From positions 1 through 64,000 of the forward strand of contig NW_026924048.1 in assembly GCF_032062105.1 (NCBI RefSeq): 64,000 nt of DNA, given 5' to 3'. Below are positions 28,449 to 47,119 of this stretch, in pieces (the first letter of the stretch is position 1; each line of letters begins with the position of its first letter). Below the pieces are notes generated by a model. That model did not search any database. It saw only the letters and a program-made list of their open reading frames with translations, and was not told the origin of the DNA. The position numbers and the translations under genes are program-made. This DNA is from Saccostrea cucullata. Taxonomy: Eukaryota.

Positions 28449-28615
28449 ATATAAGGAATCTCTGTCTAGATAGTATAGTAAGCCAGGGACATCAACGATA
28501 CTAGTATTGGAAAACGTGGAATAATTTATGCCCCTTATGCAAATTATCCCACGTATCTCACTATTGTTGATGCCCTGGCATACTATACTAACTAGAGAGT
28601 GATTCCATAAGTATA
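28449..28615. repeat. Imperfect ~165-bp palindrome centred near 28533
   Basis: GGAATC..CTAGATAGTATAGTAAGCCAGGG..ATCAAC..ACGTGGAATAATTT pairs with AAATTATCCCACGT..GTTGAT..CCCTGGCATACTATACTAACTAG..GATTCC. Confidence 0.8.
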
Positions 28616-29495
28616 GCACTAAAACCAACAACACTGTATATCCTAAAAGTCGGATGTACTAAGTAGATACAAGATCATGGATGGAAATTTATATAAAGAA
28701 TGAAAATGTCCAATGACAGGAAAATTGTACAATGTTTGGGACGACCTGTCCCTTTCCCAAGGACAAAGGAAAAAAGTTAAGAAGTCATAAAAACAAAGGG
28801 AAAAAAAGAAGAGAAAACAAAAGCATAACTATTTACACTAAATATTTGCAATGTGAAATGTTGTGTTTGAAGTTTCTGATCAGACTCGCAGAAAAAGAAA
28901 TCCGGATCGCAAGAAAAATGCGCCCGTTCTATCGGGTGTACTCAGGCGAAGTCATTTAAGAAGTAAACAAAAATGTTAAAAATTCTCTGGGAAATGAACT
29001 TTTAGTTGGTGACAAGATCAAATCCTGTGAAGCCCGAAGGGCTTCTCAGTAGATTTGATAACGTACCAACTAAAAGTTCATTTCCTAGTGAACTTTGTAA
29101 CATTGTTGTTTATCACTTATATTTAGACGAATAAATTTCAAGTAAAACTGCATTTATTACACGAACGGGACGCCGTATTGCTATGTTGTGACGCGCAATG
29201 ACCTAGAAGTTATTAGTTCACTCGCTCATTTGAATGTTTACATTCATGTTTAGAAGTCTAGTTAAGGAAATATCTGTATACTTAAAGTGAAAGAACAATG
29301 ATCGCTGCTGTGAATAATCTTAATATATATTTTAAAAGTTCTGAAAATATTTGAATTCAAAAGTGGTGGTACATGTATCGGCAGTTTTAGTTTACATAAC
29401 CCCGAAGGAATTTCGGGTTAAAAAGGTAAGTGCTGTTAGGGGCCTTACGTGTTACTATTCAAAACTTTATTCACACCGAAAGAAGGTTTAAAATT

Positions 29496-30574
29496 TGTAA
29501 CAGGGGGTTGTGATGAAGAACAACACGTACTCCTCTGTCAGGGTTCAGGTCATATATTTATTCGACACAGTGAGCATAACAAATGTTAATGTTAACAGCC
29601 CTGAAATATAATAAAACAACAATATAATAACACATCAAATCAATCCTATTAATCATCTATACATGTAGCTCTCATAGTAACATATTCATATTGATATATT
29701 ATAGATGATACAGATATATGTACATTTACTCTCAATTAAGGGAGATAACTCTTATAGTCAATATATGGACATTACATATTTTCTCCCATATAAAGGCATA
29801 AAAAATAGTACTAATTAAAACAAATAATTCCTCACCATTCTGTGGGAAAAGGCTTCCACAATGATATGGTGGTAACCGCTTTAATTAACATGTATATGGA
29901 CTCTGTAATTTAATACAGTATACATTAAAATATATATTCCTTTAAAATAAAATCATCTTTTCACTTTGAACAAAGTTACCAAATATCTGGGTCATAAAAA
30001 TATATGGTGTAACTTGAATATAACAATTTACACTTATAATATAATACATTACTGATCTTTATAATCAATAATTCCAATCATAAAAATAACATCTTTCTCT
30101 CATGGTCATGACATTCAATTAATATGAAGTGAAATTGGGATCTTTAATAAATGCAGATCTATGGAATAGACATATTACTTGACAATTAGTAATAAGGAAA
30201 GTTAGTACTTACCAGAAAATGGAATTTGTCAGTCTCCAAAAGTCAGTCATGGAGTCCATAAAAACTCAGTCTTGGTCATTAACTCAACAAGACAAAGAAT
30301 GAATATTTTGGCGGTAAAACCAATGACCATAAGAATAAAACCAATGAAAATCAACTTGACAACCAAACTACCAATAAGAACCAATAACACTCCAAAACCT
30401 TTGAACTGCCCTAAGGTAACTAATTATCTATATACAGGTGTACAGGTAAAGGGCTAAGGATATAAAGGAGCAGATCAAGCTTTTTATACTTTTATCTATT
30501 CTGGTAGTTTAATTTATTTACATTAAATTTAAAACACTTATTTATTATATACGCATATTATACACACTACTACA
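29496..30574 (-). repeat. Gypsy 3' LTR (1079 bp)
   Basis: TGTAACAGG...CTACTACA; over 99% identical to the other two LTRs. Confidence 0.97.
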
Positions 30575-30584
30575 ACCTCCCCCT
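30575..30584 (-). other. Polypurine tract, left unit
   Basis: AGGGGGAGGT on the minus strand immediately before the LTR. Confidence 0.85.
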
Positions 30585-30677
30585 GGTTGCAGAATGACGT
30601 CCGCGTCATTCAACAGTGAGGTTTACGCCATAAAAAGTACGGATATCTACAATGATACTAAAATACATACCTGGGTA

Positions 30678-33600
30678 TTACTGAGATGATGACACAATAT
30701 TTAAAAGAGCTATCTGGCACAAATTAGAGTCTACACTCTGTAAAAGACCATCTTTCATCATCTCTTTCAAAAAGTTGGCTCTACGTAACCAATCTGGTTC
30801 TGCTTTACCTTGCGTCATCATCACGTAATCTTTCGTCCAATCTGGGACCTTTCTTTGCCTTGTCGACTGCCGTGGAGCAGGAACTGGGGTGTCTTGCAAG
30901 GGTTCATCTTCATCTATGGAAGGCTCATCATCTTGCTCAACCACTTCATCTTCTTCTACGATCTGAACTTCTTCAACTTGATCATCATCACCTTCAGGCT
31001 GATTGGCAGGCTCCTGCTGCTGAAGAGCGTCCTCTTCTGAATCAGGTGCTGAAGCTTCTCCGGCCGAAGACAGGTCGTCACCCTCTTGACTTGAGGTCTC
31101 TGGTGGTGAATTCTTGGACACTATAGGGTTACCTATAAATGAAAATTCACTCTCAGAATCTGAAATACAAAAAGAATCTTTTGTATTAATATCTTCAGGT
31201 TCATCTCTTTTATCTGCCTTCCTTCTTTGTCTAGGTTTGGGTACTGGAGGTGAGGATATAAACTTGGATCCTATTGGCAATAGTAGGTTACGATGTAGAA
31301 CTCTACAACGTCCTTCGCCATCCTCTCGTCTCACCTTGAAAACAGGAATGTTCTTGTTTGGTTGGGATAGGATTTCATAAGGCACATCTTCCCACTTGTC
31401 TGAGATTTTGTGTTTTCCGTCGTAGGCTACAATCTTCACGAGCACTCTATCCCCAACATTCAGTATAGCTGCTCTGGCCCTAATGTCATAATTGGACTTC
31501 TGTCTTTGCTGAGAGGACTTTATTGCTGTTTCCGCTTGCTTATACGCAACTTGCAATCTTTTCCTCATCTCAGCAATATACTTGGTGGTACACTTGTCAT
31601 CATCATAGGATCTAGACAGTCCAAAAATAACATCAACAGGCAGCTTCGGTTCTCTACCGAACATCAGGAAGAATGGTGTAAATCCTGTTGTGTCATTGAC
31701 GGTAGAGTTGTATGCATGTACCAGGCTATTGATGTGTCGCTTCCAATCTGCTTTCTGGGAATTCTCTAAAGTTCTTAACATGGACAACAAGGTTCTGTTA
31801 AATCTCTCTGTTATTCCATTTCCCATTGGATGGTATGGAGTGGTCCTGGACTTGGAAATGCCTAAAAGTAAACATAATTCTTTAATAATATTGCTACAAA
31901 AATTTGTACCTTGATCAGAGTGTAATTTCTCAGGAATTCCATAATGAATGATGAAATTGTTGAAAATGGCTTCTGCTGTCGTCCTAGCTGTTTGGTTCTT
32001 TGTTGGAACTGCAATGGAAAATTGAGTAAAATGATCTGTAATAACTAAAATATTCTGAATGCCTCCTTTTGATGGTTCCAAAGTAAGGTAGTCCATGCAT
32101 ACTAACTCTAACGGCTGAGATGTAGTGATGTTAACTAGTTCTGTCTTCTCAGCTGGCCTCTTACTCTTGGTGCATCTCTCACAATTCTCAATCCAAGTTG
32201 TGACATCCTTCTGCATTCTCGGCCAATAAAACCTTTGTCGTACCAATGATAAAGTCTTATCACGGCCTAGATGTCCCATCTTATTGTGGAGATACTTTAG
32301 TACTGTTGGAATAGATGAGGCTGGGATTATGTGCTGTTCAAGTGTGTTCCCCTCGTTCTTAACTTCTCGTATCAAAAATCCATCCTTTATCTTCAGTTTT
32401 GAGAAGTTCCTGTGAAAAATAAGGTCATTTTCAGTCTGGAGTAAGTTCTTTCTAGGTCGAACTCCTGTGAGAACTTGCTGCTTCCAATAAGAGATAGTAG
32501 TATCATCATCTTGGAGTGCAACAATATCAAAATGGTCTCCAGGTTCACTGACAGGTTGCATAAACTGGCATATCTCTTCATCTACACAAAGTGTCTCTGC
32601 ATAAGGTTGACCTATCTGGCATATGGCTTTGATGGATTCTGAAGAAATGGTCTCTGTTTGATTCAGTCTGGATAAGCTGTCTGCATCAATATTACTTTTA
32701 CCTGGTTTGTAAAGAATTTTGAAATTGTAACCTGCCAAAGAAGAAATCCAACGATGTCCTGTCGCGTCCAATTTCGCACTGCTTAATACGTAGGTAAGGG
32801 GATTGTTATCGGTGAAAACTGTGAATTCTTTTCCTTGGAGATAATCTGCAAACTTTTCAGTGACTGCCCATTTTAATGCCAAAAACTCGAGTTTATGTGT
32901 AGGGTAATTTTTCTCCGAGCGGCTTAATCCACGACTGGCATATGCAATAACTCTGTCCGACCCATTTTGCGTTTGGTACAATACTGCTCCCAATCCAGTT
33001 TGGCAGGCATCTGTGTGCAGCTTAAAAGGTATGCTGAAATCTGGATAAGCTAATATGGGTGGAGTTGTAAGTTTTTCTTTAAGGATGTCGAATGCCACTT
33101 GTTGCTCTTGATTCCATTTCCATTTTGGGTCTATCTTTTGCTTGCTGTTACTTCTAGGTTTCTTTCCTACAGCCATTACATCTATCAGTGGTCTAGCAAT
33201 TTTGGCAAAATCTTTAATGAATTTCCTGTAGTAGCCAGCAAAACCTAAAAACTGTCGAACCTGTTCTGCATTAATTGGTACTGGCCAGTTTTTTACCTTG
33301 GAAATTTTGTCTGGGTCTAGCTCAACCCCATCCTTGGAGACAATATGTCCCACATACTTAACCCTACTCATAAGAAAAGAACATTTTTTAGGAGAAAGTT
33401 TAAGTCCATAATCCCTAATTCGCTGAAAAACCTGTTGTAGTCGATCAAGATGTTGCCTAAAAGTTGAAGAAAATATAATTAGATCGTCTAAGTAAATAAA
33501 ACAAATTTTGAGGTGAAGGTCTCCTAAACATTCTTCTTGTAGCCGTTGGTAGGTGGCTGGGGCGTTCGCTAAACCAAAACTCATCTTGTTGAATTCGTAG

Positions 33601-35051
33601 AAACCTAGGGGTCCCACTGTGAATGCAGTTCTCTCTTTATGATGTTCCTCAATCTCGATCTGGTGGTAGCTGGACTTCATGTCAAGGACACTGAAGTAAG
33701 TATTACCGGATAGGGAATCCAAGATTTCTTCAATCCTCGGTAGTGCATAATTGTCCTTTATGGTCCTTGCATTAAGTTGTCTGTAGTCAACGCAGAGGCG
33801 TAGTGAGCCATCACTTTTGCGGACTAACACCACATTCGATGAAAAGGGAGAATGGGATGGTCTTATTATCCCTGCAGCCAACAGATCTTTAATATGGGAC
33901 CGCACTTCCTCTATCATGGCTGGTGGTACTCTACGATATTTCTGCTTAAATGGTGTCTCATCAGATAATTCAATGCGGTGCTTTACTTTATCCGTTGTCC
34001 CTATATCTGTATCACCAGTAGAAAAGATGTCTTGATAGGATTCTATTAAGTCTCTGCAAGCCTGTTTCTCTTCTTCAGTAATGTCGTCTGGTAAATGGAT
34101 CTTACTTAGTATCCTCTCCAACTCAGGTGATGATGCTGGTTCACTCTTGGAAAATTTACCAGTATCCTCTATGACTACAGGCTGGATCTCACATATGATG
34201 GCTTTAGGTGAAATGGAAATGGTTCTCGTAGTGATATTGCTGATGGTGACAGGCAACAGCTGATGTTCGTCATACATGTACTGGTGTAGTGTTGCCTCTA
34301 TATCAACATCATCTGGTATGCATGATCTTGAAGACTGGTGCATCATAACAGTAACTTGCTGATATGGAATCTTCTTATCAACATATCCTGTGATGGTGGT
34401 GTTACTGTTTGGTGGAATCACGATTCTTGTTGTTTCTGCACTTTTCACCAGTCCTAAGGCATATCCATTTTTCTGTAAGTCTCTTTCTCTAAGTACTATA
34501 CTACGGAAGGCTAAGTACCATGGTGTCTGGATAGCAACTTCCTGTAAAAATCTCGAACCATGTTCCTCTCTCGTGACATCAATAAGACTCTGTAAGATGT
34601 TTGTCCCTATGAGAACAGGTACATGGGAGTTGTAAGTACTATTGGGTACAATCAGAAAAAAGCAGTCATGTAATTGGTCTAATCCAGGGATGCCGAATGG
34701 TGTCAGGTTAACACTGACATATCCGAGGTAAGGCATGAGTTGTCCATCCGCACATTCTATTCTTATGGCTTCTTCTATTGGATGTAACTCCGCATCTCTA
34801 CTTAAATTCTGGTAATAAAAAGCTTCACTGATGGTCGAGACTGTAGCTCCTGTGTCAATAAGTGCGGTACATATTACATCATTGATGGACACTCTAATCT
34901 CATTTGATGATCCGATTATTGGAACTTTGGGACTCCTTGTTCGCTTGCCAACCCCTTGTCCCCAGACGCTGGCTTCTTGGAGTTTAAATGAGCCCTTCTG
35001 TGATCCATTCGAACTCGGCATCCAATGGCTATGTGACCCTTCTGTCCACAT
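30678..35051 (-). CDS. pol: Gypsy Pol polyprotein, left unit (entered by -1 frameshift near 34985)
   Basis: Protease ALIDTGA; RT LDMKSSYHQ and YLDD; RNase H TDAC, EFLA, TDNN; integrase HNKMGH..CERC with D,D(35)E core; acidic C-terminal tail. Confidence 0.97.
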   Translation of the reverse strand: MWTEGSHSHWMPSSNGSQKGSFKLQEASVWGQGVGKRTRSPKVPIIGSSNEIRVSINDVICTALIDTGATVSTISEAFYYQNLSRDAELHPIEEAIRIECADGQLMPYLGYVSVNLTPFGIPGLDQLHDCFFLIVPNSTYNSHVPVLIGTNILQSLIDVTREEHGSRFLQEVAIQTPWYLAFRSIVLRERDLQKNGYALGLVKSAETTRIVIPPNSNTTITGYVDKKIPYQQVTVMMHQSSRSCIPDDVDIEATLHQYMYDEHQLLPVTISNITTRTISISPKAIICEIQPVVIEDTGKFSKSEPASSPELERILSKIHLPDDITEEEKQACRDLIESYQDIFSTGDTDIGTTDKVKHRIELSDETPFKQKYRRVPPAMIEEVRSHIKDLLAAGIIRPSHSPFSSNVVLVRKSDGSLRLCVDYRQLNARTIKDNYALPRIEEILDSLSGNTYFSVLDMKSSYHQIEIEEHHKERTAFTVGPLGFYEFNKMSFGLANAPATYQRLQEECLGDLHLKICFIYLDDLIIFSSTFRQHLDRLQQVFQRIRDYGLKLSPKKCSFLMSRVKYVGHIVSKDGVELDPDKISKVKNWPVPINAEQVRQFLGFAGYYRKFIKDFAKIARPLIDVMAVGKKPRSNSKQKIDPKWKWNQEQQVAFDILKEKLTTPPILAYPDFSIPFKLHTDACQTGLGAVLYQTQNGSDRVIAYASRGLSRSEKNYPTHKLEFLALKWAVTEKFADYLQGKEFTVFTDNNPLTYVLSSAKLDATGHRWISSLAGYNFKILYKPGKSNIDADSLSRLNQTETISSESIKAICQIGQPYAETLCVDEEICQFMQPVSEPGDHFDIVALQDDDTTISYWKQQVLTGVRPRKNLLQTENDLIFHRNFSKLKIKDGFLIREVKNEGNTLEQHIIPASSIPTVLKYLHNKMGHLGRDKTLSLVRQRFYWPRMQKDVTTWIENCERCTKSKRPAEKTELVNITTSQPLELVCMDYLTLEPSKGGIQNILVITDHFTQFSIAVPTKNQTARTTAEAIFNNFIIHYGIPEKLHSDQGTNFCSNIIKELCLLLGISKSRTTPYHPMGNGITERFNRTLLSMLRTLENSQKADWKRHINSLVHAYNSTVNDTTGFTPFFLMFGREPKLPVDVIFGLSRSYDDDKCTTKYIAEMRKRLQVAYKQAETAIKSSQQRQKSNYDIRARAAILNVGDRVLVKIVAYDGKHKISDKWEDVPYEILSQPNKNIPVFKVRREDGEGRCRVLHRNLLLPIGSKFISSPPVPKPRQRRKADKRDEPEDINTKDSFCISDSESEFSFIGNPIVSKNSPPETSSQEGDDLSSAGEASAPDSEEDALQQQEPANQPEGDDDQVEEVQIVEEDEVVEQDDEPSIDEDEPLQDTPVPAPRQSTRQRKVPDWTKDYVMMTQGKAEPDWLRRANFLKEMMKDGLLQSVDSNLCQIALLNIVSSSQ

Positions 35052-36145
35052 TTATAACAGGTAGGGGCTTCATACTCGTACCTCGGTGTGTCTGACACAA
35101 CATCTGACTGAGGCATCCTAACTGACTGACTAGGAAATCCTCTATAACTTCCTCGTCTTCTTCCTCGTTGGAAGGACGGCCTTACTGGTCTGTACTGCTG
35201 AGGCATCTGTGGGTTGTAGCTATAACCGTAGTGTTGCTTCATTCCCCTAACCTCACTACTCAGTTGTTGAATCTGTGCTTCAAGAGATTCAAAGCTCTTT
35301 GTTGACGGATCCACAGGGACTGCTGACTTTACAGTTGGTAGCTTCTTTTTCTCACTGGGTGGCTGATGCTCCAATTCCACCTTCCTAACTGCAGCTCTTA
35401 AACTGTCAAATGTAAGGCACTTGTCATATAAATGACCACAAATGTCCTTCAATGTTGGGCGTAGTCCTTTAAAGAACATGGTACGCAGCATTTGTTGGGA
35501 TTCATGGTATCCAACTAATCCTTTCTGTTGTGCTTTACTGATTATATCCTCTAAGCGACAACTCCATCTAGCACACTCTTCGTCCTCTTTCTGATGGGCA
35601 CTACAAAATTCTGCTAAGATGTCCTCTTTCTCAGACACGGTTCCATATATGCTGTCGAGTTTGTTGATAATAGCCTCAATGGAAGCTCCTGGGCCAAGAT
35701 GCATAACGACTCGACTTGCCTCTCCTTTCAGAGAACGTCGTATGGCATGATGAATAGCTTCTGGCTTGCACGACTCTCTAAGCAGGCACTCAACCTCGTA
35801 TTTCCATACGTCATAGGATGTGTCAGTCTTGGTGTTTCCAGAGAAGAAGGAAATCTTTGGATAATGAAAGTTGACAACGGATTTCGATTCTGCTGTGGTA
35901 GGAGTAACATCATGATGCTCCATTTTCACTTCCGTTGGCTTAGTCATGGATTCCATCCACTGCAAGAAATCTTGTGGAGTGTCGGCTTTCGGCTTCATCT
36001 TCATTGATGCTAGCGCGTCTACAATGTTGTTCACTTCCGTCTGCGTAAAGGTTACTTCCTCTTGCTGTGTTGTTTCTGTTGTCTCCTTGGTGTTCGACAT
36101 GATGATGAATGTGATAGTAAACAGTAAACAATAAACTAAGTTCAT
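34916..36145 (-). CDS. gag: Gypsy Gag, PNMA-like capsid plus CCHC zinc knuckle, left unit (probable start ATG 36100)
   Basis: PKISFFSG...YDVWKYEV...IRRSLKGEA...KLDSIYG; CYKCGQKGHIAIGC. Confidence 0.95.
   Translation of the reverse strand: MNLVYCLLFTITFIIMSNTKETTETTQQEEVTFTQTEVNNIVDALASMKMKPKADTPQDFLQWMESMTKPTEVKMEHHDVTPTTAESKSVVNFHYPKISFFSGNTKTDTSYDVWKYEVECLLRESCKPEAIHHAIRRSLKGEASRVVMHLGPGASIEAIINKLDSIYGTVSEKEDILAEFCSAHQKEDEECARWSCRLEDIISKAQQKGLVGYHESQQMLRTMFFKGLRPTLKDICGHLYDKCLTFDSLRAAVRKVELEHQPPSEKKKLPTVKSAVPVDPSTKSFESLEAQIQQLSSEVRGMKQHYGYSYNPQMPQQYRPVRPSFQRGRRRGSYRGFPSQSVRMPQSDVVSDTPRYEYEAPTCYKCGQKGHIAIGCRVRMDHRRAHLNSKKPASGDKGLASEQGVPKFQ
34925..34988 (-). promoter_or_regulatory. -1 ribosomal frameshift signal, left unit
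   Basis: Heptamer T TTA AAC (34988-34982) in the gag frame leads into pol K-L-Q-E; downstream GCCAGC/GTTGGC stem whose loop GGGAC can pair with a later GTCCC. Confidence 0.85.
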
Positions 36146-37624
36146 AAATCAATGTGAAAATATTTCTACAATATGCAAAATTTCAGCAAATAATGAAAAT
36201 GGTAATTTTAGAAATTCACACCAGATAAAATTCTAAATAATTTCAAATATGCAAGGGAGGGTTGTTCTAAATGAACAAATGAAATATTGGGCTAATATAT
36301 TCGAAAATAACTTTCAATTCAGGAGGGTAGTTCACGTGTGGAACTTAAAAAATTTGGTATGCTATTTATAAACCTGAGAAACAAAAATAAATTTCTACTT
36401 CCGGTTACTTTACCTTACTTCCGGTCAAATGATTTGAGTATGCAAGTCACATAAGATTATAAATAAGAAAAGATTGATCAACACTAGGTTCTCAAATTTG
36501 CAAGTGCAAGTCTGGTTAAATTTCACTGAAAATAAGAAATATGCAAAGGGATTATGCCTAAAGAGTAAATGTATGCAATGTAATAAACCCAAACCTTACC
36601 TGGAAATCAATTACAAGTTTAAAGAAATAACAAACACCTAGAAAATAAACCAAATTTTAAAGTCAAACCCAAAACGTGTTTACACAGGAAGCTGCTTACT
36701 GAAAACAAATTTCGCGTAGGCCGAGCTCGATCGAAAATACGTAAACAAAAAAAAGAAACCGATCTCGATATAAATACGGGCGCAAAGGCGGCAAATTCAA
36801 AACACAAATTTATAAATACAGGGCAATGGGGAATATGGGATTTTAAAAGAGCTGTTTAACTATATTTTAGAACTAATTTAAATAACTATACACTACAAAC
36901 ACCAGGTGAATAATCCAACAACACAAAACACCACTGAGAATAAATCAAACTCTATAACCTTCACTCAACTTATTTACAAACTGACCTGCTATAAAATACC
37001 ACAGACTAAAACAACTATGTCTCGTCCGTAAACAGTCAAATGTCAAAAGGAATAGCAGCTAAATATTTAATAAGGTAATACCTGGGTAGGTTGAAGGGTA
37101 TAAGGGTATGTGCACTGTTAATTTACCACTTACCCATCCTGGCTCTCTTGCTTTCAGTCCAATAATAATTACTCAAATAAAAATAATGTGCACAGTATAT
37201 ACAAATATAACCCAAGCTAAGTAAGACGACAGACGGACAAACCAGTCATGACCAATAATCACTTATATACATATGCTAGCTAGCTACCTCAAAAATAATA
37301 AACATGCATGTATCTAAGAAAATCTTATCTAAAGAAAAACCTTATCAGTGTCTTTGGTTCCGGGTGCACCAGTCGAGTCGATGAAGCATGCATGCAGCTG
37401 AGAATCACTACACTGTCACTATCAGCTGATATCGTAAACACACAAATGTTCTGATCAGTCACGCGTGAAACTATGAAATCACATACAGTGTTCTGTGTTC
37501 ACTCTGAAGTGTCATGCACAAATCGCTGAATACTCCGGGTATCAGTCACAAATGACGTCTCCTGGGAATACCATCAGGGATGTACCACGCCCAGTCCTCT
37601 CCGTTCACTGCTGTGCCTCACTGT

Positions 37625-37642
37625 GTCCCTACATGGGCGCCA
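37625..37642 (-). other. Primer binding site, tRNA-Lys-like, left unit
   Basis: TGGCGCCCATGTAGGGAC, 3 nt from the LTR; 14/18 match to the tRNA-Lys3 PBS TGGCGCCCGAACAGGGAC. Confidence 0.85.
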
Positions 37643-37645
37643 AAT

Positions 37646-38724
37646 TGTAACAGGGGGTTGTGATGAAGAACAACACGTACTCCTCTGTCAGGGTTCAGGT
37701 CATATATTTATTCGACACAGTGAGCATAACAAATGTTAATGTTAACAGCCCTGAAATATAATAAAACAACAATATAATAACACATCAAATCAATCCTATT
37801 AATCATCTATACATGTAGCTCTCATAGTAACATATTCATAATGATATATTATAGATGATACAGATATATGTACATTTACTCTCAATTAAGGGAGATAACT
37901 CTTATAGTCAATATATGGACATTACATATTTTCTCCCATATAAAGGCATAAAAAATAGTACTAATTAAAACAAATAATTCCTCACCATTCTGTGGGAAAA
38001 GGCTTCCACAATGATATGGTGGTAACCGCTTTAATTAACATGTATATGGACTCTGTAATTTAATACAGTATACATTAAAATATATATTCCTTTAAAATAA
38101 AATCATCTGTTCACTTTGAACAAAGTTACCAAATATCTGGGTCATAAAAATATATGGTGTAACTTGAATATAACAATTTACACTTATAATATAATACATT
38201 ACTGATCTTTATAATCAATAATTCCAATCATAAAAATAACATCTTTCTCTCATGGTCATGACATTCAATTAATATGAAGTGAAATTGGGATCTTTAATAA
38301 ATGCAAATCTATGGAATAGACATATTACTTGACAATTAGTAATAAGGAAAGTTAGTACTTACCAGAAAATGGAATTTGTCAGTCTCCAAAAGTCAGTCAT
38401 GGAGTCCATAAAAACTCAGTCTTGTTCATTAACTCAACAAGACAAAGAATGAATATTTTGGCGGTAAAACCAATGACCATAAGAATAAAACCAATGAAAA
38501 TCAACTTGACAACCAAACTACCAATAAGAACCAATAACACTCCAAAACCTTTGAACTGCCCTAAGGTAACTAATTATCTATATACAGGTGTACAGGTAAA
38601 GGGCTAAGGATATAAAGGAGCAGATCAAGCTTTTTATACTTTTATCTATTCTGGTAGTTTAATTTATTTACATTAAATTTAAAACACTTATTTATTATAT
38701 ACGCATATTATACACACTACTACA
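37646..38724 (-). repeat. Gypsy shared middle LTR
   Basis: Flanked by the PBS of one unit and the PPT of the other; no TSD. Confidence 0.97.
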
Positions 38725-38734
38725 ACCTCCCCCT
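38725..38734 (-). other. Polypurine tract, right unit
   Basis: AGGGGGAGGT on the minus strand. Confidence 0.85.
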
Positions 38735-38827
38735 GGTTGCAGAATGACGTCCGCGTCATTCAACAGTGAGGTTTACGCCATAAAAAGTACGGATATCTAC
38801 AATGATACTAAAATACATACCTGGGTA

Positions 38828-41800
38828 TTACTGAGATGATGACACAATATTTAAAAGAGCTATCTGGCACAAATTAGAGTCTACACTCTGTAAAAGACCA
38901 TCTTTCATCATCTCTTTCAAAAAGTTGGCTCTACGTAACCAATCTGGTTCTGCTTTACCTTGCGTCATCATCACGTAATCTTTCGTCCAATCTGGGACCT
39001 TTCTTTGCCTTGTCGACTGCCGTGGAGCAGGAACTGGGGTGTCTTGCAAGGGTTCATCTTCATCTATGGAAGGCTCATCATCTTGCTCAACCACTTCATC
39101 TTCTTCTACGATCTGAACTTCTTCAACTTGATCATCATCACCTTCAGGCTGATTGGCAGGCTCCTGCTGCTGAAGAGCGTCCTCTTCTGAATCAGGTGCT
39201 GAAGCTTCTCCGGCCGAAGACAGGTCGTCACCCTCTTGACTGGAGGTCTCTGGTGGTGAATTCTTGGACACTATAGGGTTACCTATAAATGAAAATTCAC
39301 TCTCAGAATCTGAAATACAAAAAGAATCTTTTGTATTAATATCTTCAGGTTCATCTCTTTTATCTGCCTTCCTTCTTTGTCTAGGTTTGGGTACTGGAGG
39401 TGAGGATATAAACTTGGATCCTATTGGCAATAGTAGGTTACGATGTAGAACTCTACAACGTCCTTCGCCATCCTCTCGTCTCACCTTGAAAACAGGAATG
39501 TTCTTGTTTGGTTGGGATAGGATTTCATAAGGCACATCTTCCCACTTGTCTGAGATTTTGTGTTTTCCGTCGTAGGCTACAATCTTCACGAGCACTCTAT
39601 CCCCAACATTCAGTATAGCTGCTCTGGCCCTAATGTCATAATTGGACTTCTGTCTTTGCTGAGAGGACTTTATTGCTGTTTCCGCTTGCTTATACGCAAC
39701 TTGCAATCTTTTCCTCATCTCAGCAATATACTTGGTGGTACACTTGTCATCATCATAGGATCTAGACAGTCCAAAAATAACATCAACAGGCAGCTTCGGT
39801 TCTCTACCGAACATCAGGAAGAATGGTGTAAATCCTGTTGTGTCATTGACGGTAGAGTTGTATGCATGTACCAGGCTATTGATGTGTCGCTTCCAATCTG
39901 CTTTCTGGGAATTCTCTAAAGTTCTTAACATGGACAACAAGGTTCTGTTAAATCTCTCTGTTATTCCATTTCCCATTGGATGGTATGGAGTGGTCCTGGA
40001 CTTGGAAATGCCTAAAAGTAAACATAATTCTTTAATAATATTGCTACAAAAATTTGTACCTTGATCAGAGTGTAATTTCTCAGGAATTCCATAATGAATG
40101 ATGAAATTGTTGAAAATGGCTTCTGCTGTCGTCCTAGCTGTTTGGTTCTTTGTTGGAACTGCAATGGAAAATTTAGTAAAATGATCTGTAATAACTAAAA
40201 TATTCTGAATGCCTCCTTTTGATGGTTCCAAAGTAAGGTAGTCCATGCATACTAACTCTAACGGCTGAGATGTAGTGATGTTAACTAGTTCTGTCTTCTC
40301 AGCTGGCCTCTTACTCTTGGTGCATCTCTCACAATTCTCAATCCAAGTTGTGACATCCTTCTGCATTCTCGGCCAATAAAACCTTTGTCGTACCAATGAT
40401 AAAGTCTTATCACGGCCTAGATGTCCCATCTTATTGTGGAGATACTTTAGTACTGTTGGAATAGATGAGGCTGGGATTATGTGCTGTTCAAGTGTGTTCC
40501 CCTCGTTCTTAACTTCTCGTATCAAAAATCCATCCTTTATCTTCAGTTTTGAGAAGTTCCTGTGAAAAATAAGGTCATTTTCAGTCTGGAGTAAGTTCTT
40601 TCTAGGTCGAACTCCTGTGAGAACTTGCTGCTTCCAATAAGAGATAGTAGTATCATCATCTTGGAGTGCAACAATATCAAAATGGTCTCCAGGTTCACTG
40701 ACAGGTTGCATAAACTGGCATATCTCTTCATCTACACAAAGTGTCTCTGCATAAGGTTGACCTATCTGGCATATGGCTTTGATGGATTCTGAAGAAATGG
40801 TCTCTGTTTGATTCAGTCTGGATAAGCTGTCTGCATCAATATTACTTTTACCTGGTTTGTAAAGAATTTTGAAATTGTAACCTGCCAAAGAAGAAATCCA
40901 ACGATGTCCTGTCGCGTCCAATTTCGCACTGCTTAATACGTAGGTAAGGGGATTGTTATCGGTGAAAACTGTGAATTCTTTTCCTTGGAGATAATCTGCA
41001 AACTTTTCAGTGACTGCCCATTTTAATGCCAGAAACTCGAGTTTATGTGTAGGGTAATTTTTCTCCGAGCGGCTTAATCCACGACTGGCATATGCAATAA
41101 CTCTGTCCGACCCATTTTGCGTTTGGTACAATACTGCTCCCAATCCAGTTTGGCAGGCATCTGTGTGCAGCTTAAAAGGTATGCTGAAATCTGGATAAGC
41201 TAATATGGGTGGAGTTGTAAGTTTTTCTTTAAGGATGTCGAATGCCACTTGTTGCTCTTGATTCCATTTCCATTTTGGGTCTATCTTTTGCTTGCTGTTA
41301 CTTCTAGGTTTCTTTCCTACAGCCATTACATCTATCAGTGGTCTAGCAATTTTGGCAAAATCTTTAATGAATTTCCTGTAGTAGCCAGCAAAACCTAAAA
41401 ACTGTCGAACCTGTTCTGCATTAATTGGTACTGGCCAGTTTTTTACCTTGGAAATTTTGTCTGGGTCTAGCTCAACCCCATCCTTGGAGACAATATGTCC
41501 CACATACTTAACCCTACTCATAAGAAAAGAACATTTTTTAGGAGAAAGTTTAAGTCCATAATCCCTAATTCGCTGAAAAACCTGTTGTAGTCGATCAAGA
41601 TGTTGCCTAAAAGTTGAAGAAAATATAATTAGATCGTCTAAGTAAATAAAACAAATTTTGAGGTGAAGGTCTCCTAAACATTCTTCTTGTAGCCGTTGGT
41701 AGGTGGCTGGGGCGTTCGCTAAACCAAAACTCATCTTGTTGAATTCGTAGAAACCTAGGGGTCCCACTGTGAATGCAGTTCTCTCTTTATGATGTTCCTC

Positions 41801-43201
41801 AATCTCGATCTGGTGGTAGCCGGACTTCATGTCAAGGACACTGAAGTAAGTATTACCGGAGAGGGAATCCAAGATTTCTTCAATCCTCGGTAGTGCATAA
41901 TTGTCCTTTATGGTCCTTGCATTAAGTTGTCTGTAGTCAACGCAGAGGCGTAGTGAGCCATCACTTTTGCGGACTAACACCACATTCGATGAAAAGGGAG
42001 AATGGGATGGTCTTATTATCCCTGCAGCCAACAGATCTTTAATATGGGACCGCACTTCCTCTATCATGGCTGGTGGTACTCTACGATATTTCTGCTTAAA
42101 TGGTGTCTCATCGGATAATTCAATGCGGTGCTTTACTTTATCCGTTGTCCCTATATCTGTATCACCAGTAGAAAAGATGTCTTGATAGGATTCTATTAAG
42201 TCTCTGCAAGCCTGTTTCTCTTCTTCAGTAATGTCGTCTGGTAAATGGATCTTACTTAGTATCCTCTCCAACTCAGGTGATGATGCTGGTTCACTCTTGG
42301 AAAATTTACCAGTATCCTCTATGACTACAGGCTGGATCTCACATATGATGGCTTTAGGTGAAATGGAAATGGTTCTCGTAGTGATATTGCTGATGGTGAC
42401 AGGCAACAGCTGATGTTCGTCATACATGTACTGGTGTAGTGTTGCCTCTATATCAACATCATCTGGTATGCATGATCTTGAAGACTGGTGCATCATAACA
42501 GTAACTTGCTGATATGGAATCTTCTTATCAACATATCCTGTGATGGTGGTGTTACTGTTTGGTGGAATCACGATTCTTGTTGTTTCTGCACTTTTCACCA
42601 GTCCTAAGGCATATCCATTTTTCTGTAAGTCTCTTTCTCTAAGTACTATACTACGGAAGGCTAAGTACCATGGTGTCTGGATAGCGACTTCCTGTAAAAA
42701 TCTCGAACCATGTTCCTCTCTCGTGACATCAATAAGACTCTGTAAGATGTTTGTCCCTATGAGAACAGGTACATGGGAGTTGTAAGTACTATTGGGTACA
42801 ATCAGAAAAAAGCAGTCATGTAATTGGTCTAATCCAGGGATGCCGAATGGTGTCAGGTTAACACTGACATATCCGAGGTAAGGCATGAGTTGTCCATCCG
42901 CACATTCTATTCTTATGGCTTCTTCTATTGGATGTAACTCCGCATCTCTACTTAAATTCTGGTAATAAAAAGCTTCACTGATGGTCGAGACTGTAGCTCC
43001 TGTGTCAATAAGTGCGGTACATATTACATCATTGATGGACACTCTAATCTCATTTGATGATCCGATTATTGGAACTTTGGGACTCCTTGTTCGCTTGCCA
43101 ACCCCTTGTCCCCAGACGCTGGCTTCTTGGAGTTTAAATGAGCCCTTCTGTGATCCATTCGGACTCGGCATCCAATGGCTATGTGACCCTTCTGTCCACA
43201 T
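38828..43201 (-). CDS. pol: Gypsy Pol polyprotein, right unit
   Basis: As the left unit but with the more canonical LDMKSGYHQ and DHFTKF. Confidence 0.97.
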   Translation of the reverse strand: MWTEGSHSHWMPSPNGSQKGSFKLQEASVWGQGVGKRTRSPKVPIIGSSNEIRVSINDVICTALIDTGATVSTISEAFYYQNLSRDAELHPIEEAIRIECADGQLMPYLGYVSVNLTPFGIPGLDQLHDCFFLIVPNSTYNSHVPVLIGTNILQSLIDVTREEHGSRFLQEVAIQTPWYLAFRSIVLRERDLQKNGYALGLVKSAETTRIVIPPNSNTTITGYVDKKIPYQQVTVMMHQSSRSCIPDDVDIEATLHQYMYDEHQLLPVTISNITTRTISISPKAIICEIQPVVIEDTGKFSKSEPASSPELERILSKIHLPDDITEEEKQACRDLIESYQDIFSTGDTDIGTTDKVKHRIELSDETPFKQKYRRVPPAMIEEVRSHIKDLLAAGIIRPSHSPFSSNVVLVRKSDGSLRLCVDYRQLNARTIKDNYALPRIEEILDSLSGNTYFSVLDMKSGYHQIEIEEHHKERTAFTVGPLGFYEFNKMSFGLANAPATYQRLQEECLGDLHLKICFIYLDDLIIFSSTFRQHLDRLQQVFQRIRDYGLKLSPKKCSFLMSRVKYVGHIVSKDGVELDPDKISKVKNWPVPINAEQVRQFLGFAGYYRKFIKDFAKIARPLIDVMAVGKKPRSNSKQKIDPKWKWNQEQQVAFDILKEKLTTPPILAYPDFSIPFKLHTDACQTGLGAVLYQTQNGSDRVIAYASRGLSRSEKNYPTHKLEFLALKWAVTEKFADYLQGKEFTVFTDNNPLTYVLSSAKLDATGHRWISSLAGYNFKILYKPGKSNIDADSLSRLNQTETISSESIKAICQIGQPYAETLCVDEEICQFMQPVSEPGDHFDIVALQDDDTTISYWKQQVLTGVRPRKNLLQTENDLIFHRNFSKLKIKDGFLIREVKNEGNTLEQHIIPASSIPTVLKYLHNKMGHLGRDKTLSLVRQRFYWPRMQKDVTTWIENCERCTKSKRPAEKTELVNITTSQPLELVCMDYLTLEPSKGGIQNILVITDHFTKFSIAVPTKNQTARTTAEAIFNNFIIHYGIPEKLHSDQGTNFCSNIIKELCLLLGISKSRTTPYHPMGNGITERFNRTLLSMLRTLENSQKADWKRHINSLVHAYNSTVNDTTGFTPFFLMFGREPKLPVDVIFGLSRSYDDDKCTTKYIAEMRKRLQVAYKQAETAIKSSQQRQKSNYDIRARAAILNVGDRVLVKIVAYDGKHKISDKWEDVPYEILSQPNKNIPVFKVRREDGEGRCRVLHRNLLLPIGSKFISSPPVPKPRQRRKADKRDEPEDINTKDSFCISDSESEFSFIGNPIVSKNSPPETSSQEGDDLSSAGEASAPDSEEDALQQQEPANQPEGDDDQVEEVQIVEEDEVVEQDDEPSIDEDEPLQDTPVPAPRQSTRQRKVPDWTKDYVMMTQGKAEPDWLRRANFLKEMMKDGLLQSVDSNLCQIALLNIVSSSQ

Positions 43202-44295
43202 TTATAACAGGTAGGGGCTTCATACTCGTACCTCGGTGTATCTGACACAACATCTGACTGAGGCATCCTAACTGACTGACTAGGAAATCCCCTATAATTT
43301 CCTCGTCTTCTTCCTCGTTGGAAGGACGGCCTTACTGGTCTGTACTGCTGAGGCATCTGTGGGTTGTAGCTATAACCGTAGTGTTGCTTCATTCCCCTAA
43401 CCTCACTACTCAGTTGTTGAATCTGTGCTTCAAGAGATTCAAAGCTCTTTGTTGACGGATCCACAGGGACTGCTGACTTTACAGTTGGTAGCTTCTTTTT
43501 CTCACTGGGTGGCTGATGCTCCAATTCCACCTTCCTAACTGCAGCTCTTAAACTGTCAAATGTAAGGCACTTGTCATATAAATGACCACAAATGTCCTTC
43601 AATGTTGGGCGTAGTCCTTTAAAGAACATGGTACGCAGCATTTGTTGGGATTCATGGTATCCAACTAATCCTTTCTGTTGTGCTTTACTGATTATATCCT
43701 CTAAGCGACAACTCCATCTAGCACACTCTTCGTCCTCTTTCTGATGGGCACTACAAAATTCTGCTAAGATGTCCTCTTTCTCAGACACGGTTCCATATAT
43801 GCTGTCGAGTTTGTTGATAATAGCCTCAATGGAAGCTCCTGGGCCAAGATGCATAACGACTCGACTTGCCTCTCCTTTCAGAGAACGTCGTATGGCATGA
43901 TGAATAGCTTCTGGCTTGCACGACTCTCTAAGCAGGCACTCAACCTCGTATTTCCATACGTCATAGGATGTGTCAGTCTTGGTGTTTCCAGAGAAGAAGG
44001 AAATCTTTGGATAATGAAAGTTGTCCACTGATTTTGATTCTGTTGTGATAGGACTAGCATAATGGTGCTCCATTTTCACTTCCGTTGGCTTAGTCATGGA
44101 TTCCATCCACTGCAAGAAATCTTGTGGAGTGTCGGCTTTCGGCTTCATCTTCATTGATGCTAGCGCGTCTACAATGTTGTTCACTTCCGTCTGCGTAAAG
44201 GTTACTTCCTCTTGCTGTGTTGTTTCTGTTGTCTCCTTGGTGTTCGACATGATGATGAATGTGATAGTAAACAGTAAACAATAAACTAAGTTCAT
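43066..44295 (-). CDS. gag: Gypsy Gag, PNMA-like plus CCHC, right unit (probable start ATG 44250)
   Basis: As the left unit except HYASPITTESKSVDNF and one S/N change. Confidence 0.95.
   Translation of the reverse strand: MNLVYCLLFTITFIIMSNTKETTETTQQEEVTFTQTEVNNIVDALASMKMKPKADTPQDFLQWMESMTKPTEVKMEHHYASPITTESKSVDNFHYPKISFFSGNTKTDTSYDVWKYEVECLLRESCKPEAIHHAIRRSLKGEASRVVMHLGPGASIEAIINKLDSIYGTVSEKEDILAEFCSAHQKEDEECARWSCRLEDIISKAQQKGLVGYHESQQMLRTMFFKGLRPTLKDICGHLYDKCLTFDSLRAAVRKVELEHQPPSEKKKLPTVKSAVPVDPSTKSFESLEAQIQQLSSEVRGMKQHYGYSYNPQMPQQYRPVRPSFQRGRRRGNYRGFPSQSVRMPQSDVVSDTPRYEYEAPTCYKCGQKGHIAIGCRVRMDHRRAHLNSKKPASGDKGLASEQGVPKFQ
43075..43138 (-). promoter_or_regulatory. -1 ribosomal frameshift signal, right unit
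   Basis: TTTAAAC at 43138-43132 with the same downstream structure. Confidence 0.85.
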
Positions 44296-45774
44296 AAATC
44301 AATGTGAAAATATTTCTACAATGTGCAAAATTTCAGCAAATAATGAAAATGGTAAATTTAGAAATTCACACCAGATAAAATTCTAAATAATTTCAAATAT
44401 GCAAGGGAGGGTTGTTCTAAATGAACAAATGAAATATTGGGCTAATATATTCGAAAATAACTTTCAATTCAGGAGGGTAGTTCACGTGTGGAACTTAAAA
44501 AATTTGGTATGCTATTTATAAACCTGAGAAACAAAAATAAATTTCTACTTCCGGTTACTTTACCTTACTTCCGGTCAAATGATTTGAGTATGCAAGTCAC
44601 ATAAGATTATAAATAAGAAAAGATTGATCAACACTAGGTTCTCAAATTTGCAAGTGCAAGTCTGGTTAAATTTCACTGAAAATAAGAAATATGCAAAGGG
44701 ATTATGCCTAAAGAGTAAATGTATGCAATGTAATAAACCCAAACCTTACCTGGAAATCAATTACAAGTTTAAAGAAATAACAAACACCTAGAAAATAAAC
44801 CAAATTTTAAAGTCAAACCCAAAACGTGTTTACACAGGAAGCTGCTTACTGAAAACAAATTTCGCGTAGGCCGAGCTCGATCGAAAATACGTAAACAAAA
44901 AAAAGAAACCGATCTCGATATAAATACGGGCGCAAAGGCGGCAAATTCAAAACACAAATTTATAAATACAGGGCAATGGGGAATATGGGATTTTAAAAGA
45001 GCTGTTTAACTATATTTTAGAACTAATTTAAATAACTATACACTACAAACACCAGGTGAATAATCCAACAACACAAAACACCACTGAGAATAAATCAAAC
45101 TCTATAACCTTCACTCAACTTATTTACAAACTGACCTGCTATAAAATACCACAGACTAAAACAACTATGTCTCGTCCGTAAACAGTCAAATGTCAAAAGG
45201 AATAGCAGTTAAATATTTAATAAGGTAATACCTGGGTAGGTTGAAGGGTATAAGGGTATGTGCACTGTTAATTTACCACTTACCCATCCTGGCTCTCTTG
45301 CTTTCAGTCCAATAATAATTACTCAAATAAAAATAATGTGCACAGTATATACAAATATAACCCAAGCTAAGTAAGACGACAGACGGACAAACCAGTCATG
45401 ACCAATAATCACTTATATACATATGCTAGCTAGCTACCTCAAAAATAATAAACATGCATGTATCTAAGAAAATCTTATCTAAAGAAAAACCTTATCAGTG
45501 TCTTTGGTTCCGGGTGCACCAGTCGAGTCGATGAAGCATGCATGCAGCTGAGAATCACTACACTGTCACTATCAGCTGATATCGTAAACACACAAATGTT
45601 CTGATCAGTCACGCGTGAAACTATGAAATCACATACAGTGTTCTGTGTTCACTCTGAAGTGTCATGCACAAATCGCTGAATACTCCGGGTATCAGTCACA
45701 AATGACGTCTCCTGGGAATACCATCAGGGATGTACCACGCCCAGTCCTCTCCGTTCACTGCTGTGCCTCACTGT

Positions 45775-45792
45775 GTCCCTACATGGGCGCCA
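45775..45792 (-). other. Primer binding site, tRNA-Lys-like, right unit
   Basis: TGGCGCCCATGTAGGGAC next to the 5' LTR. Confidence 0.85.
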
Positions 45793-45795
45793 AAT

Positions 45796-46874
45796 TGTAA
45801 CAGGGGGTTGTGATGAAGAACAACACGTACTCCTCTGTCAGGGTTCAGGTCATATATTTATTCGACACAGTGAGCGTAACAAATGTTAATGTTAACAGCC
45901 ATGAAATATAATAAAACAACAATATAATAACACATCAAATCAATCCTATTAATCATCTATACATGTAGCTCTCATAGTAACATATTCATAATGATATATT
46001 ATAGATGATACAGATATATGTACATTTACTCTCAATTAAGGGAGATAACTCTTATAGTCAATATATGGACATTACATATTTTCTCCCATATAAAGGCATA
46101 AAAAATAGTACTAATTAAAACAAATAATTCCTCACCATTCTGTGGGAAAAGGCTTCCACAATGATATGGTGGTAACCGCTTTAATTAACATGTATATGGA
46201 CTCTGTAATTTAATACAGTATACATTAAAATATATATTCTTTTAAAATAAAATCATCTGTTCACTTTGAACAAAGTTACCAAATATCTGGGTCATAAAAA
46301 TATATGGTGTAACTTGAATATAACAATTTACACTTATAATATAATACATTACTGATCTTTATAATCAATAATTCCAATCATAAAAATAACATCTTTCTCT
46401 CATGGTCATGACATTCAATTAATATGAAGTGAAATTGGGATCTTTAATAAATGCAAATCTATGGAATAGACATATTACTTGACAATTAGTAATAAGGAAA
46501 GTTAGTACTTACCAGAAAATGGAATTTGTCAGTCTCCAAAAGTCAGTCATGGAGTCCATAAAAACTCAGTCTTGGTCATTAACTCAACAAGACAAAGAAT
46601 GAATATTTTGGCGGTAAAACCAATGACCATAAGAATAAAACCAATGAAAATCAACTTGACAACCAAACTACCAATAAGAACCAATAACACTCCAAAACCT
46701 TTGAACTGCCCTAAGGTAACTAATTATCTATATACAGGTGTACAGGTAAAGGGCTAAGGATATAAAGGAGCAGATCAAGCTTTTTATACTTTTATCTATT
46801 CTGGTAGTTTAATTTATTTACATTAAATTTAAAACATTTATTTATTATATACGCATATTATACACACTACTACA
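45796..46874 (-). repeat. Gypsy 5' LTR
   Basis: Third LTR copy; followed on the plus strand by the AATT TSD. Confidence 0.97.
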
Positions 46875-47119
46875 AATTTATTGTACATCTCGTAAATGAA
46901 AAATCCATATTGTGAACATTTTATCCTTTTCATCGTTATTAACTAAGAAATATTCCAAAGCAAGTTGCACTGTGACAGAAATATGTATACAAAATATCAC
47001 CTCGCTCTGTGATTCGGTCGCGCTATGACCTCTGACCCCCAAATGAAATTAACGCAGAATTAAACACATTTTCACTTCAATAGGTTCACCTAAGAAATAT
47101 ATTTGCAAATGTAAATTAT

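What the first reader, a model, noticed from the sequence alone, without database searches (positions are those of the whole stretch)
29496..46874. Three-LTR Gypsy tandem with one TSD whose two units look like different active lineages
Seen: LTR-int-LTR-int-LTR with a single outer AATT TSD and both gag and pol open. Outside one patch I count 11 coding differences between units: 8 synonymous (31092, 32882, 33711, 33963, 34536, 35012, 35090, 35141) and 3 replacement (IN Q/K, RT S/G, Gag S/N). Neutral decay after a simple duplication would give mostly replacement changes. Inference: the units diverged under purifying selection as separate replicating copies, and the second joined the first without a new TSD, e.g. 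by recombination of a cDNA or 1-LTR circle into a resident LTR, or integration of a heterodimeric cDNA. Integrase-independent cDNA recombination producing such arrays is established for yeast Ty elements. A clean animal case with both units intact would be notable.
Basis: partly seen in the sequence, partly recalled or inferred. Interest (0 to 1): 0.8.

Follow-up and report, generated by a model that had tools for sequence, protein, structure and literature searches.

The report
Tandem Gypsy retrotransposon sharing middle LTR
Two almost identical copies of a bivalve Gypsy retrotransposon sit head to tail at one insertion site and share a middle LTR; this is a known structure, most simply made by recombination between the two LTRs of one insertion, and the hint that the copies came from separate active lineages is weak.

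Summary
The structure is in the assembly as described. There are three 1079-bp LTRs at an exact 8150-bp period with no indels, one AATT target-site duplication, and gag and pol open in both units.

The "different active lineages" reading fails its own main prediction. The two units are sister copies (support 100, shared stem 1.7%), and every other genomic copy is at least 3.2% away. All eight LTR differences are private, derived states, so the middle LTR is not a chimera of two diverged lineages.

The excluded "patch" hides two private replacements, which makes the count 8:5 (p=0.015). Three of the eight silent differences, and eight patch sites, are alleles shared with other family lineages. 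They therefore look imported by short gene conversion. A pair of allelic contigs of another copy shows the same kind of patch. What remains is 5:5.

One insertion followed by a later unequal LTR-LTR exchange fits the LTR pattern and the lower internal divergence. Residual tension remains: a mild silent excess and no indels (p about 0.02-0.04).

The reads available could not confirm the assembly. Such tandems are already known in plants, flies and yeast.

The parts
29492..29495 (.). left copy of the 4-bp target-site duplication AATT
   Evidence: family TSD length of 4 bp confirmed in three other copies
29496..30574 (-). LTR1: 3' LTR of the downstream unit (U1); three private derived substitutions (29691, 29959, 30156)
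30575..30586 (-). polypurine tract of U1, abutting the 3' LTR
   Evidence: sequence read directly
30678..35051 (-). pol of U1, 1457 aa, PR-RT-RNaseH-IN, open; -1 frame relative to gag
34916..36145 (-). gag of U1, 409 aa, PNMA-type capsid plus CCHC knuckle, open
35874..35915 (-). 42-bp patch in gag with 10 U1/U2 differences. Eight are a two-haplotype dimorphism of the whole family; two are private (35893 in U1, 35898 in U2). The counterpart in U2 is 44024-44065.
36146..37624 (-). 1.5-kb untranslated leader of U1, with no ORF of note
37625..37642 (-). primer-binding site of U1, complementary to a tRNA 3' end (...CCA), 3 nt from the LTR
   Evidence: sequence read directly; the tRNA was not identified
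37646..38724 (-). LTR2: shared central LTR; one private derived substitution (38425); ancestral at all seven sites where the outer LTRs changed
38828..43201 (-). pol of U2, 1457 aa, open
43066..44295 (-). gag of U2, 409 aa, open
45775..45792 (-). primer-binding site of U2
   Evidence: identical to the U1 counterpart at offset 8150
45796..46874 (-). LTR3: 5' LTR of the upstream unit (U2); four private derived substitutions (45876, 45901, 46240, 46837)
46875..46878 (.). right copy of the TSD AATT
28956..29491 (.). left part of an older short repeat in which the array is nested. The right part is 46879-47117. A paralogous segment at 55175-57039 joins 28955 directly to 47118.

Best explanation
One Ty3/Gypsy element of a recently active bivalve family integrated once, making the AATT duplication. 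Some time later an unequal homologous exchange took place between the right LTR of one chromatid (or homologue) and the left LTR of the other. That exchange duplicated the internal region and created the shared middle LTR. No new TSD arises in this way. Since then the two units and three LTRs have picked up point mutations in place, about 0.1% per lineage. They have also picked up a few short ectopic gene-conversion tracts from other copies of the family: the 42-bp gag patch and probably the single sites 32882, 35012 and 35141. Differences between family lineages are mostly silent, so imported alleles inflate the silent count.

Shown: the structure, the TSD, the sister relationship, the polarity of every difference, and the sharing of the patch alleles. 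Inferred: the exchange itself, its timing, and gene conversion as the source of the shared alleles.
For: (1) U1 and U2 are sisters with SH-aLRT 100 on a 0.017 stem. The nearest other internal copy is 96.8% identical and the nearest other LTR 97%.
(2) There is a single 4-bp TSD of the family's normal length. The two flanks are contiguous in a paralogous segment, so both ends belong to one locus.
(3) All 8 LTR differences are private and derived: 3 in LTR1, 1 in LTR2, 4 in LTR3. With one element and an exchange at a uniformly random time and place, LTR2 shows none of the outer changes in 22% of simulations.
(4) A delayed exchange explains why internal divergence (0.10% per lineage) is lower than LTR divergence (0.25%). 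At 462 of 1080 possible crossover positions only 4 LTR changes must post-date the exchange, giving 0.12% per lineage. That matches the internal rate (p=0.53, against p=0.06 if all parts had the same age).
(5) Eight patch sites are a two-haplotype dimorphism seen in 4 versus 13 other copies, with recombinant haplotypes present.
(6) Three of the 14 non-patch differences carry alleles present in at least 3 other copies, where 2-3% is expected (p=0.003-0.011).
(7) L009 and L010 are the same insertion on two contigs, and they also differ by an 82-bp patch of 10 changes, mostly at third codon positions. Such patches therefore arise without separate transposition histories.
(8) LTR-LTR exchange is the standard route to shared-LTR tandems in Drosophila (PMC5932611).
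Against: The silent excess does not vanish. Counts are 8S:5N (p=0.015), 5S:3N for alleles seen in no other copy (p=0.03), and 5S:5N after removing the shared alleles (p=0.11).

There are no indels among about 24 substitution events. Neutral calibrators in the same family give 6 gaps to 29 mismatches (LTR pairs) or 17 to 79 (with L009/L010 added); Fisher p=0.036 and 0.016.

Most U1-private alleles are absent from every sampled copy, so conversion from assembled donors cannot explain them.

The array is not confirmed by reads. Only short Logan contigs were available.
Confidence: 0.55

Rival explanations
1. Two sister but separately replicating copies (A = U1, B = U2) diverged under purifying selection. 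They were then joined by LTR homology. This could happen before integration (co-packaged RNAs or two cDNAs) or by recombination of a cDNA or 1-LTR circle into a resident LTR.
For: Silent excess: 8:3 (p=0.003) or 8:5 (p=0.015). dN/dS is about 0.2, the same as on the stem of this lineage (14S:7N). No indels (p=0.02-0.04). The patch and three single sites are alleles of other lineages, as template switching in mixed particles would give. The family has several lineages with young insertions (LTR pairs 98.8-99.6%, few stops), so co-expression is plausible. The parent of this lineage is itself missing from the assembly, so missing relatives are not decisive. Models of this kind exist for plants (PMC1950507; 10.1101/452573). 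Ty cDNA recombination in yeast is from my own knowledge.
Against: The units are each other's nearest relatives by a factor of ten. LTR2 is ancestral at all 7 sites where LTR1 or LTR3 is derived. A one-crossover hybrid of two diverged LTRs explains at most 5 of the 8 sites, and only if the crossover falls between LTR positions 106 and 196. The order this needs has a prior of about 1/60 (my calculation). If the LTR changes instead post-date the joining, they imply about 30 neutral internal changes, more than the total seen. Internal divergence does not exceed LTR divergence. No closer copy exists in public protein data.
Confidence: 0.17
2. Assembly artefact. The true locus holds one 2-LTR element. 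Two haplotypes of it (or reads of it) were concatenated through the LTR overlap into a false tandem.
For: The assembly is fragmented (23,869 contigs). It keeps both haplotypes at some loci: L009 and L010 are 99.1% identical including their flanks. Divergence within the TE in that allelic pair (0.21%) equals U1-U2 divergence (0.20% outside the patch). No second contig for this locus exists, so the haplotypes here are collapsed or one is missing. No read evidence spans LTR2.
Against: The array lies in the interior of the contig, with no Ns. The period is exact. LTR2 has a private change of its own. The L009/L010 alleles differ by many indels, whereas U1 and U2 differ by none. Shared-LTR tandems are common biology (PMC5932611). 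Another was flagged in this genome, although that could equally be a systematic artefact.
Confidence: 0.18
3. Dimer made in a single reverse-transcription event from two RNAs of the same source (Sabot-Schulman template switch), integrated once. All differences arose afterwards.
For: A single TSD. The units are sisters. All LTR differences are private. The model is published (PMC1950507).
Against: The model predicts that the outer LTRs are the most alike. Here they are the least alike: 7 differences against 4 and 5. It makes all parts the same age, which fits the LTR-versus-internal counts less well (p=0.06) than a delayed exchange does (p=0.53). It has the same unexplained silent excess and lack of indels.
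Confidence: 0.08

Closest known systems
Shared-LTR tandem LTR retrotransposons formed by ectopic or unequal LTR-LTR recombination (Drosophila; McGurk and Barbash 2018, PMC5932611, Fig. 1A; Ke and Voytas 1997 as cited there)
   Same: LTR-int-LTR-int-LTR with one shared LTR, no target site inside the junction, and units in register.
   Different: This one is in a bivalve, with both units fully intact. It was assembled end to end rather than inferred from junction reads.
Complex LTR retrotransposons with flanking TSDs in Triticeae, rice and maize, explained by template switching between co-packaged RNAs (Sabot and Schulman 2007, PMC1950507)
   Same: Three LTRs, two complete cores and a single flanking TSD.
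   Different: Their diagnostic feature, outer LTRs most similar, is not met here: the outer pair is the most different.
Pre-integration recombination of two cDNAs of one family (Zeng and Sun 2018 preprint, 10.1101/452573: 45 of 63 rice complexes have TSDs) and integrase-independent Ty1 cDNA recombination giving arrays in yeast (my own knowledge, not checked here)
   Different: The expected LTR distance pattern is not seen. That pattern is one outer LTR equidistant from the other two, or a middle LTR that is a simple chimera. No separate relatives of either unit were found.

Membership tests
Ty3/Gypsy (Metaviridae) LTR retrotransposon | Direct LTRs ending TG...CA, with a PBS after the 5' LTR and a PPT before the 3' LTR | tested here: met
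   TGT...ACA termini; an 18-nt tRNA-3'-end complement 3 nt from the LTR; a purine run abutting the 3' LTR
Ty3/Gypsy (Metaviridae) LTR retrotransposon | pol domain order PR-RT-RNaseH-IN, and gag with a CCHC knuckle | tested here: met
   Asp_protease 52-154, RVT_1 410-571, RNase H 646-775, Integrase_H2C2 909-965, rve 978-1075; gag PNMA plus zf-CCHC
Ty3/Gypsy (Metaviridae) LTR retrotransposon | Short TSD of fixed length | tested here: met
   AATT here; TACA, TAAA and AATA in three other copies
Shared-LTR tandem from one insertion (unequal LTR-LTR exchange) | Three co-oriented LTRs in register, the same TSD outside and none inside | tested here: met
Shared-LTR tandem from one insertion (unequal LTR-LTR exchange) | Units are each other's closest relatives | tested here: met
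   SH-aLRT 100, path length 0.0038 against at least 0.039 to any other copy
Shared-LTR tandem from one insertion (unequal LTR-LTR exchange) | Differences between units look neutral (replacement-rich, with indels) | tested here: inconclusive
   8S:5N p=0.015; 5S:5N p=0.11 after removing shared alleles; 0 indels p=0.016-0.036
Shared-LTR tandem from one insertion (unequal LTR-LTR exchange) | The array physically exists (molecules span it) | not testable with these tools
   only Logan contigs of at most 620 bp were laid
Template-switch heterodimer (Sabot-Schulman) | Outer LTRs are the most similar pair | tested here: not met
   LTR1-LTR3 differ at 7 sites, LTR1-LTR2 at 4, LTR2-LTR3 at 5
Two-lineage junction by cDNA or LTR recombination (Zeng-Sun; Ty1-type) | Each unit has a closer relative elsewhere than its neighbour | tested here: not met
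   this assembly only; public proteins: best gag hit 74% identical
Two-lineage junction by cDNA or LTR recombination (Zeng-Sun; Ty1-type) | The middle LTR is a chimera of the two outer LTRs | tested here: not met
   LTR2 is ancestral at all 7 sites where the outer LTRs are derived; the site pattern is interleaved
Two-lineage junction by cDNA or LTR recombination (Zeng-Sun; Ty1-type) | Divergence between units shaped by purifying selection | tested here: inconclusive

The most novel reading that the evidence does not exclude
The two units are sister but independently replicating copies of an active bivalve Gypsy lineage. They were fused through LTR homology, either in a mixed particle or by cDNA recombination into a resident LTR. 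The few LTR changes are later noise. This would be an intact animal example of integrase-independent or heterodimeric tandem formation.
Probability: 0.17. Interest if true: 0.55.

Novelty: new member of a known kind. Interest (0 to 1): 0.3.

Why it matters
If the array is real, it is a clean, fully intact shared-LTR tandem in a mollusc. It is useful as a marker of how often LTR-LTR exchange duplicates rather than deletes elements, and as a possible seed for satellite formation. The side results are probably of more general use. This family consists of several 4-5% diverged lineages that all inserted recently, and short patches of lineage-specific alleles move between copies, even between alleles of one insertion. 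That process can mimic purifying selection when two near-identical copies are compared, which is a caution for dN/dS-based claims about TE copies.

Tried and rejected
Read support. The one run search returned only Logan contigs. The pieces laid were at most 620 bp, depth is not a copy number, and minority alleles are dropped. At 30156, 32024 and 34536 only the family-majority letter was seen. This says nothing for or against the tandem.

Allelic contig or empty site. Searches with both flanks and with a 28-nt empty-site pattern (up to 3 mismatches) found no second copy of the locus.

Closer relatives outside the assembly. Exact-protein look-ups for both gag and both pol products were blank. 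The large protein search gave a best gag hit of only 74% identity.

More genomic copies. I did not try another route.

L009/L010 as a neutral control for silent bias. It gave 9S:2N, but 10 of its 13 differences lie in one patch, so it calibrates patches and not point mutations.

Double insertion into the same site: rejected, because there is no TSD at the inner junctions and the LTR is shared.

CpG hypermutability as the cause of the silent excess: rejected, because only 35012 is a CpG transition.

Full report
STRUCTURE

A direct-repeat scan and a base-by-base comparison at an offset of 8150 bp show that 29496-38724 and 37646-46874 are gaplessly collinear. There are three 1079-bp LTRs, at 29496-30574, 37646-38724 and 45796-46874. 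Each begins TGT and ends ACA. They are separated by two 7071-bp internal regions.

AATT lies immediately outside both outer ends. The chance that two 4-mers agree in DNA of this composition is about 0.7%. Three other copies of the family have 4-bp TSDs: TACA, TAAA and AATA.

The element is on the minus strand. In element order it reads: LTR3, PBS, a 1.5-kb leader without ORFs, gag, pol, PPT, LTR2, then the same again, ending in LTR1. Both gag ORFs (409 aa; PNMA-type capsid and CCHC) and both pol ORFs (1457 aa; protease, RT, RNase H, integrase; -1 frame relative to gag) are open.

A paralogous segment at 55175-57039 joins window position 28955 directly to 47118. The two flanks therefore belong to one locus. 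The array sits inside an older repeat of about 780 bp.

THE DIFFERENCES

The internal regions differ at 24 sites and the LTRs at 8.

I used type-specific silent fractions computed from this coding sequence. The mean was 0.29, against 0.215 by simple site counting. On that basis 8 of 11 silent has p=0.003. The count is therefore real and nominally significant.

A search of the window's own 1.17-Gb genome with the internal region returned the two units and then copies of 96% identity or less. The LTR search returned the three LTRs and then hits of 97% or less.

I built an alignment anchored on unit 1 from 16 other copies with at least 60% coverage. Its maximum-likelihood tree puts U1 and U2 together with SH-aLRT 100 on a stem of 0.017 substitutions per site. 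The terminal branches are 0.0025 and 0.0012. The nearest other copy is at path length 0.039.

The prediction that each unit has a closer relative elsewhere fails in this assembly. One caveat applies. The parent of this lineage is also absent from the assembly, so absence of relatives is normal for this lineage and is not decisive on its own.

Public data could not extend the test. Exact-protein look-ups were blank, and the best gag hit among 5.8 billion proteins is 74% identical. The gag relatives with names come from oysters, pearl oysters, scallops and abalone. Earlier notes of this scan call the genome oyster-like.

POLARITY OF EACH DIFFERENCE

I read the state of every variable site in the other copies.

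LTRs. All eight differences are private to one LTR, and the private state is the derived one. There are three in LTR1, one in LTR2 and four in LTR3. LTR2 is ancestral at all seven sites where an outer LTR has changed, and those sites interleave along the LTR.

A middle LTR that was a one-crossover hybrid of two diverged lineage LTRs could account for at most five of the eight sites. Even that requires the crossover to fall between LTR positions 106 and 196. The required order of lineage changes around the crossover has a prior of about 1 in 60 (my calculation). The alternative is that the LTR changes all post-date the joining. At 0.25% per lineage they would then imply about 30 neutral internal changes, more than the total observed.

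The diagnostic of the Sabot-Schulman template-switch model is that the outer LTRs are the most alike (PMC1950507). That is not met: the outer pair differs at 7 sites and the other pairs at 4 and 5. The distance pattern of the Zeng-Sun cDNA-recombination model (10.1101/452573) is not met either.

Internal regions. Eight of the ten patch sites form a two-haplotype dimorphism of the whole family. The U1 type occurs in four other copies and the U2 type in thirteen. Some copies carry recombinant haplotypes.

The other two patch differences are replacements that are private or nearly so: 35893 in U1, and 35898 in U2, which is shared with one other copy.

Outside the patch, nine changes are derived in U1 and five in U2. 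For three sites (32882, 35012, 35141) the rarer allele is present in three to five other copies. A random new mutation would hit such an allele with probability 0.022-0.034. Three of fourteen is therefore an excess (p=0.003-0.011). All three of these sites are silent.

WHAT THIS DOES TO THE SELECTION ARGUMENT

Counting every coding difference that is not one of the eight dimorphic patch sites gives 8 silent to 5 replacement (p=0.015). Setting aside the three alleles shared with other lineages gives 5:5 (p=0.11). Using only alleles seen in no other copy gives 5:3 (p=0.03).

The stem of this lineage, which did evolve as an active element, shows 14:7. The data thus lie between neutral and selected, and they cannot separate the two with about ten events.

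"Both ORFs open" carries no weight, because at 0.1-0.25% divergence an intact frame is expected anyway. The copies 4-5% away mostly have zero to two in-frame stops, and their own LTR pairs are 98.8-99.6% identical. The family therefore consists of several long-diverged lineages that all inserted recently. Any DNA moved between copies will be rich in silent differences.

A CONTROL FOR PATCHES

Loci L009 and L010, on two different contigs, align end to end including their flanks at 99.1%. They are the same insertion, either as uncollapsed haplotypes or as a recent duplication.

Inside the element they differ at 13 sites. Ten of these lie within 82 bp, spaced mostly in multiples of three. Clustered, silent-rich patches thus arise between copies that cannot have had separate transposition histories. 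This supports short ectopic gene conversion as the source of the gag patch here.

BEST MODEL

The best model is one insertion followed by an unequal exchange between the right LTR of one chromatid or homologue and the left LTR of the other. This is the standard route to shared-LTR tandems (PMC5932611).

The middle LTR would consist of the right LTR up to the crossover and the left LTR after it. With the exchange at a uniformly random time and place, LTR2 shows none of the seven outer changes in 22% of simulations.

The model also explains a rate difference. LTRs carry 2.5 changes per kb per lineage and the internal regions 1.0. LTR1 and LTR3 have diverged since integration, whereas the units have diverged only since the exchange. 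For 462 of 1080 crossover positions only four LTR changes need post-date the exchange, which gives 1.2 per kb. That matches the internal rate (p=0.53). If everything were the same age the fit would be p=0.06.

WHAT REMAINS UNEXPLAINED

Two things remain: the mild silent excess, and the complete lack of indels among about 24 substitution events. Neutral calibrators in the same family give 6 gaps to 29 mismatches (LTR pairs of six copies), or 17 to 79 when L009/L010 is included. Fisher p is 0.036 and 0.016.

They carry limited weight for two reasons. They are post-hoc observations on few events. The finding was also selected for looking unusual.

ASSEMBLY

No internal junction is unique to a tandem, so only molecules longer than an LTR can prove it. 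The single run search gave Logan contigs only. The pieces laid were at most 620 bp and minority alleles are dropped. This is uninformative.

The assembly does retain both haplotypes at some loci, and divergence between the units equals the within-element divergence of that allelic pair. A false concatenation of two haplotypes through the LTR therefore cannot be excluded, and I give it about 18%. Against it: the array lies in the interior of the contig, there are no Ns, the register is exact, LTR2 has a private change of its own, and the units lack the indels that real alleles show.

NOVELTY

TSD-flanked three-LTR complexes are described in grasses (PMC1950507) and in rice, where 45 of 63 complexes have TSDs (10.1101/452573). 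Shared-LTR tandems are reported for most LTR families of D. melanogaster (PMC5932611). Ty arrays in yeast are known (my own knowledge). Another three-LTR tandem was flagged in this same genome (unchecked). This is a new member of a known kind.

Noticed in passing
L009 (G000:C15300:17358-26599) and L010 (G000:C2513:20234-29468): The same old copy of this family, with the same flanks, sits on two contigs at 99.1% identity (50 mismatches, 11 indels). This is probably a pair of uncollapsed haplotypes. One 1.5-kb segment is 2.5% diverged while the rest is about 0.2%. An 82-bp stretch in pol holds 10 of the 13 internal differences, mostly at third codon positions.
   Followed up: partly
window 55175-57039 versus 28601-28955 plus 47118-48664: A local paralogous segment (85-86% identity) joins the two flanks of the array directly. 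It lacks both the Gypsy array and the repeat of about 780 bp in which the array is nested (28956-29491 and 46879-47117). That repeat family has thousands of candidate copies in the genome.
   Followed up: partly
L003-L016 (other copies of the family): The family consists of lineages 4-5% apart whose individual insertions are young (LTR pairs 98.8-99.6% identical) and mostly free of in-frame stops. Several diverged lineages were therefore active at about the same time. The gag patch region shows recombinant haplotypes among them.
   Followed up: partly
window 36146-37624 and 44296-45774: There is an unusually long leader (1.5 kb) between the PBS and the gag start codon, with no ORF over 62 aa and strong A/T skew. 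Its function is not examined.
   Followed up: no
window 16000-20000: A G+C-richer block (0.41 against about 0.30 around it) with no ORF of 250 aa or more. It may be a degraded element.
   Followed up: no
G000:C19197:376812-377892, C3019:15356-16440, C4852:1-948: Three LTR hits at 97% identity that have no matching internal hit. They may be solo LTRs of the same lineage as the array and would be the closest outgroups.
   Followed up: no
run X5 (organism B), loose end at window 29519: A contig from a differently labelled organism carries the start of an LTR of this family behind a different flank. Other pieces from this run match the internal region without mismatch over 110-158 bp. The family is therefore present, nearly identical in parts, beyond the assembled sample.
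   Followed up: no
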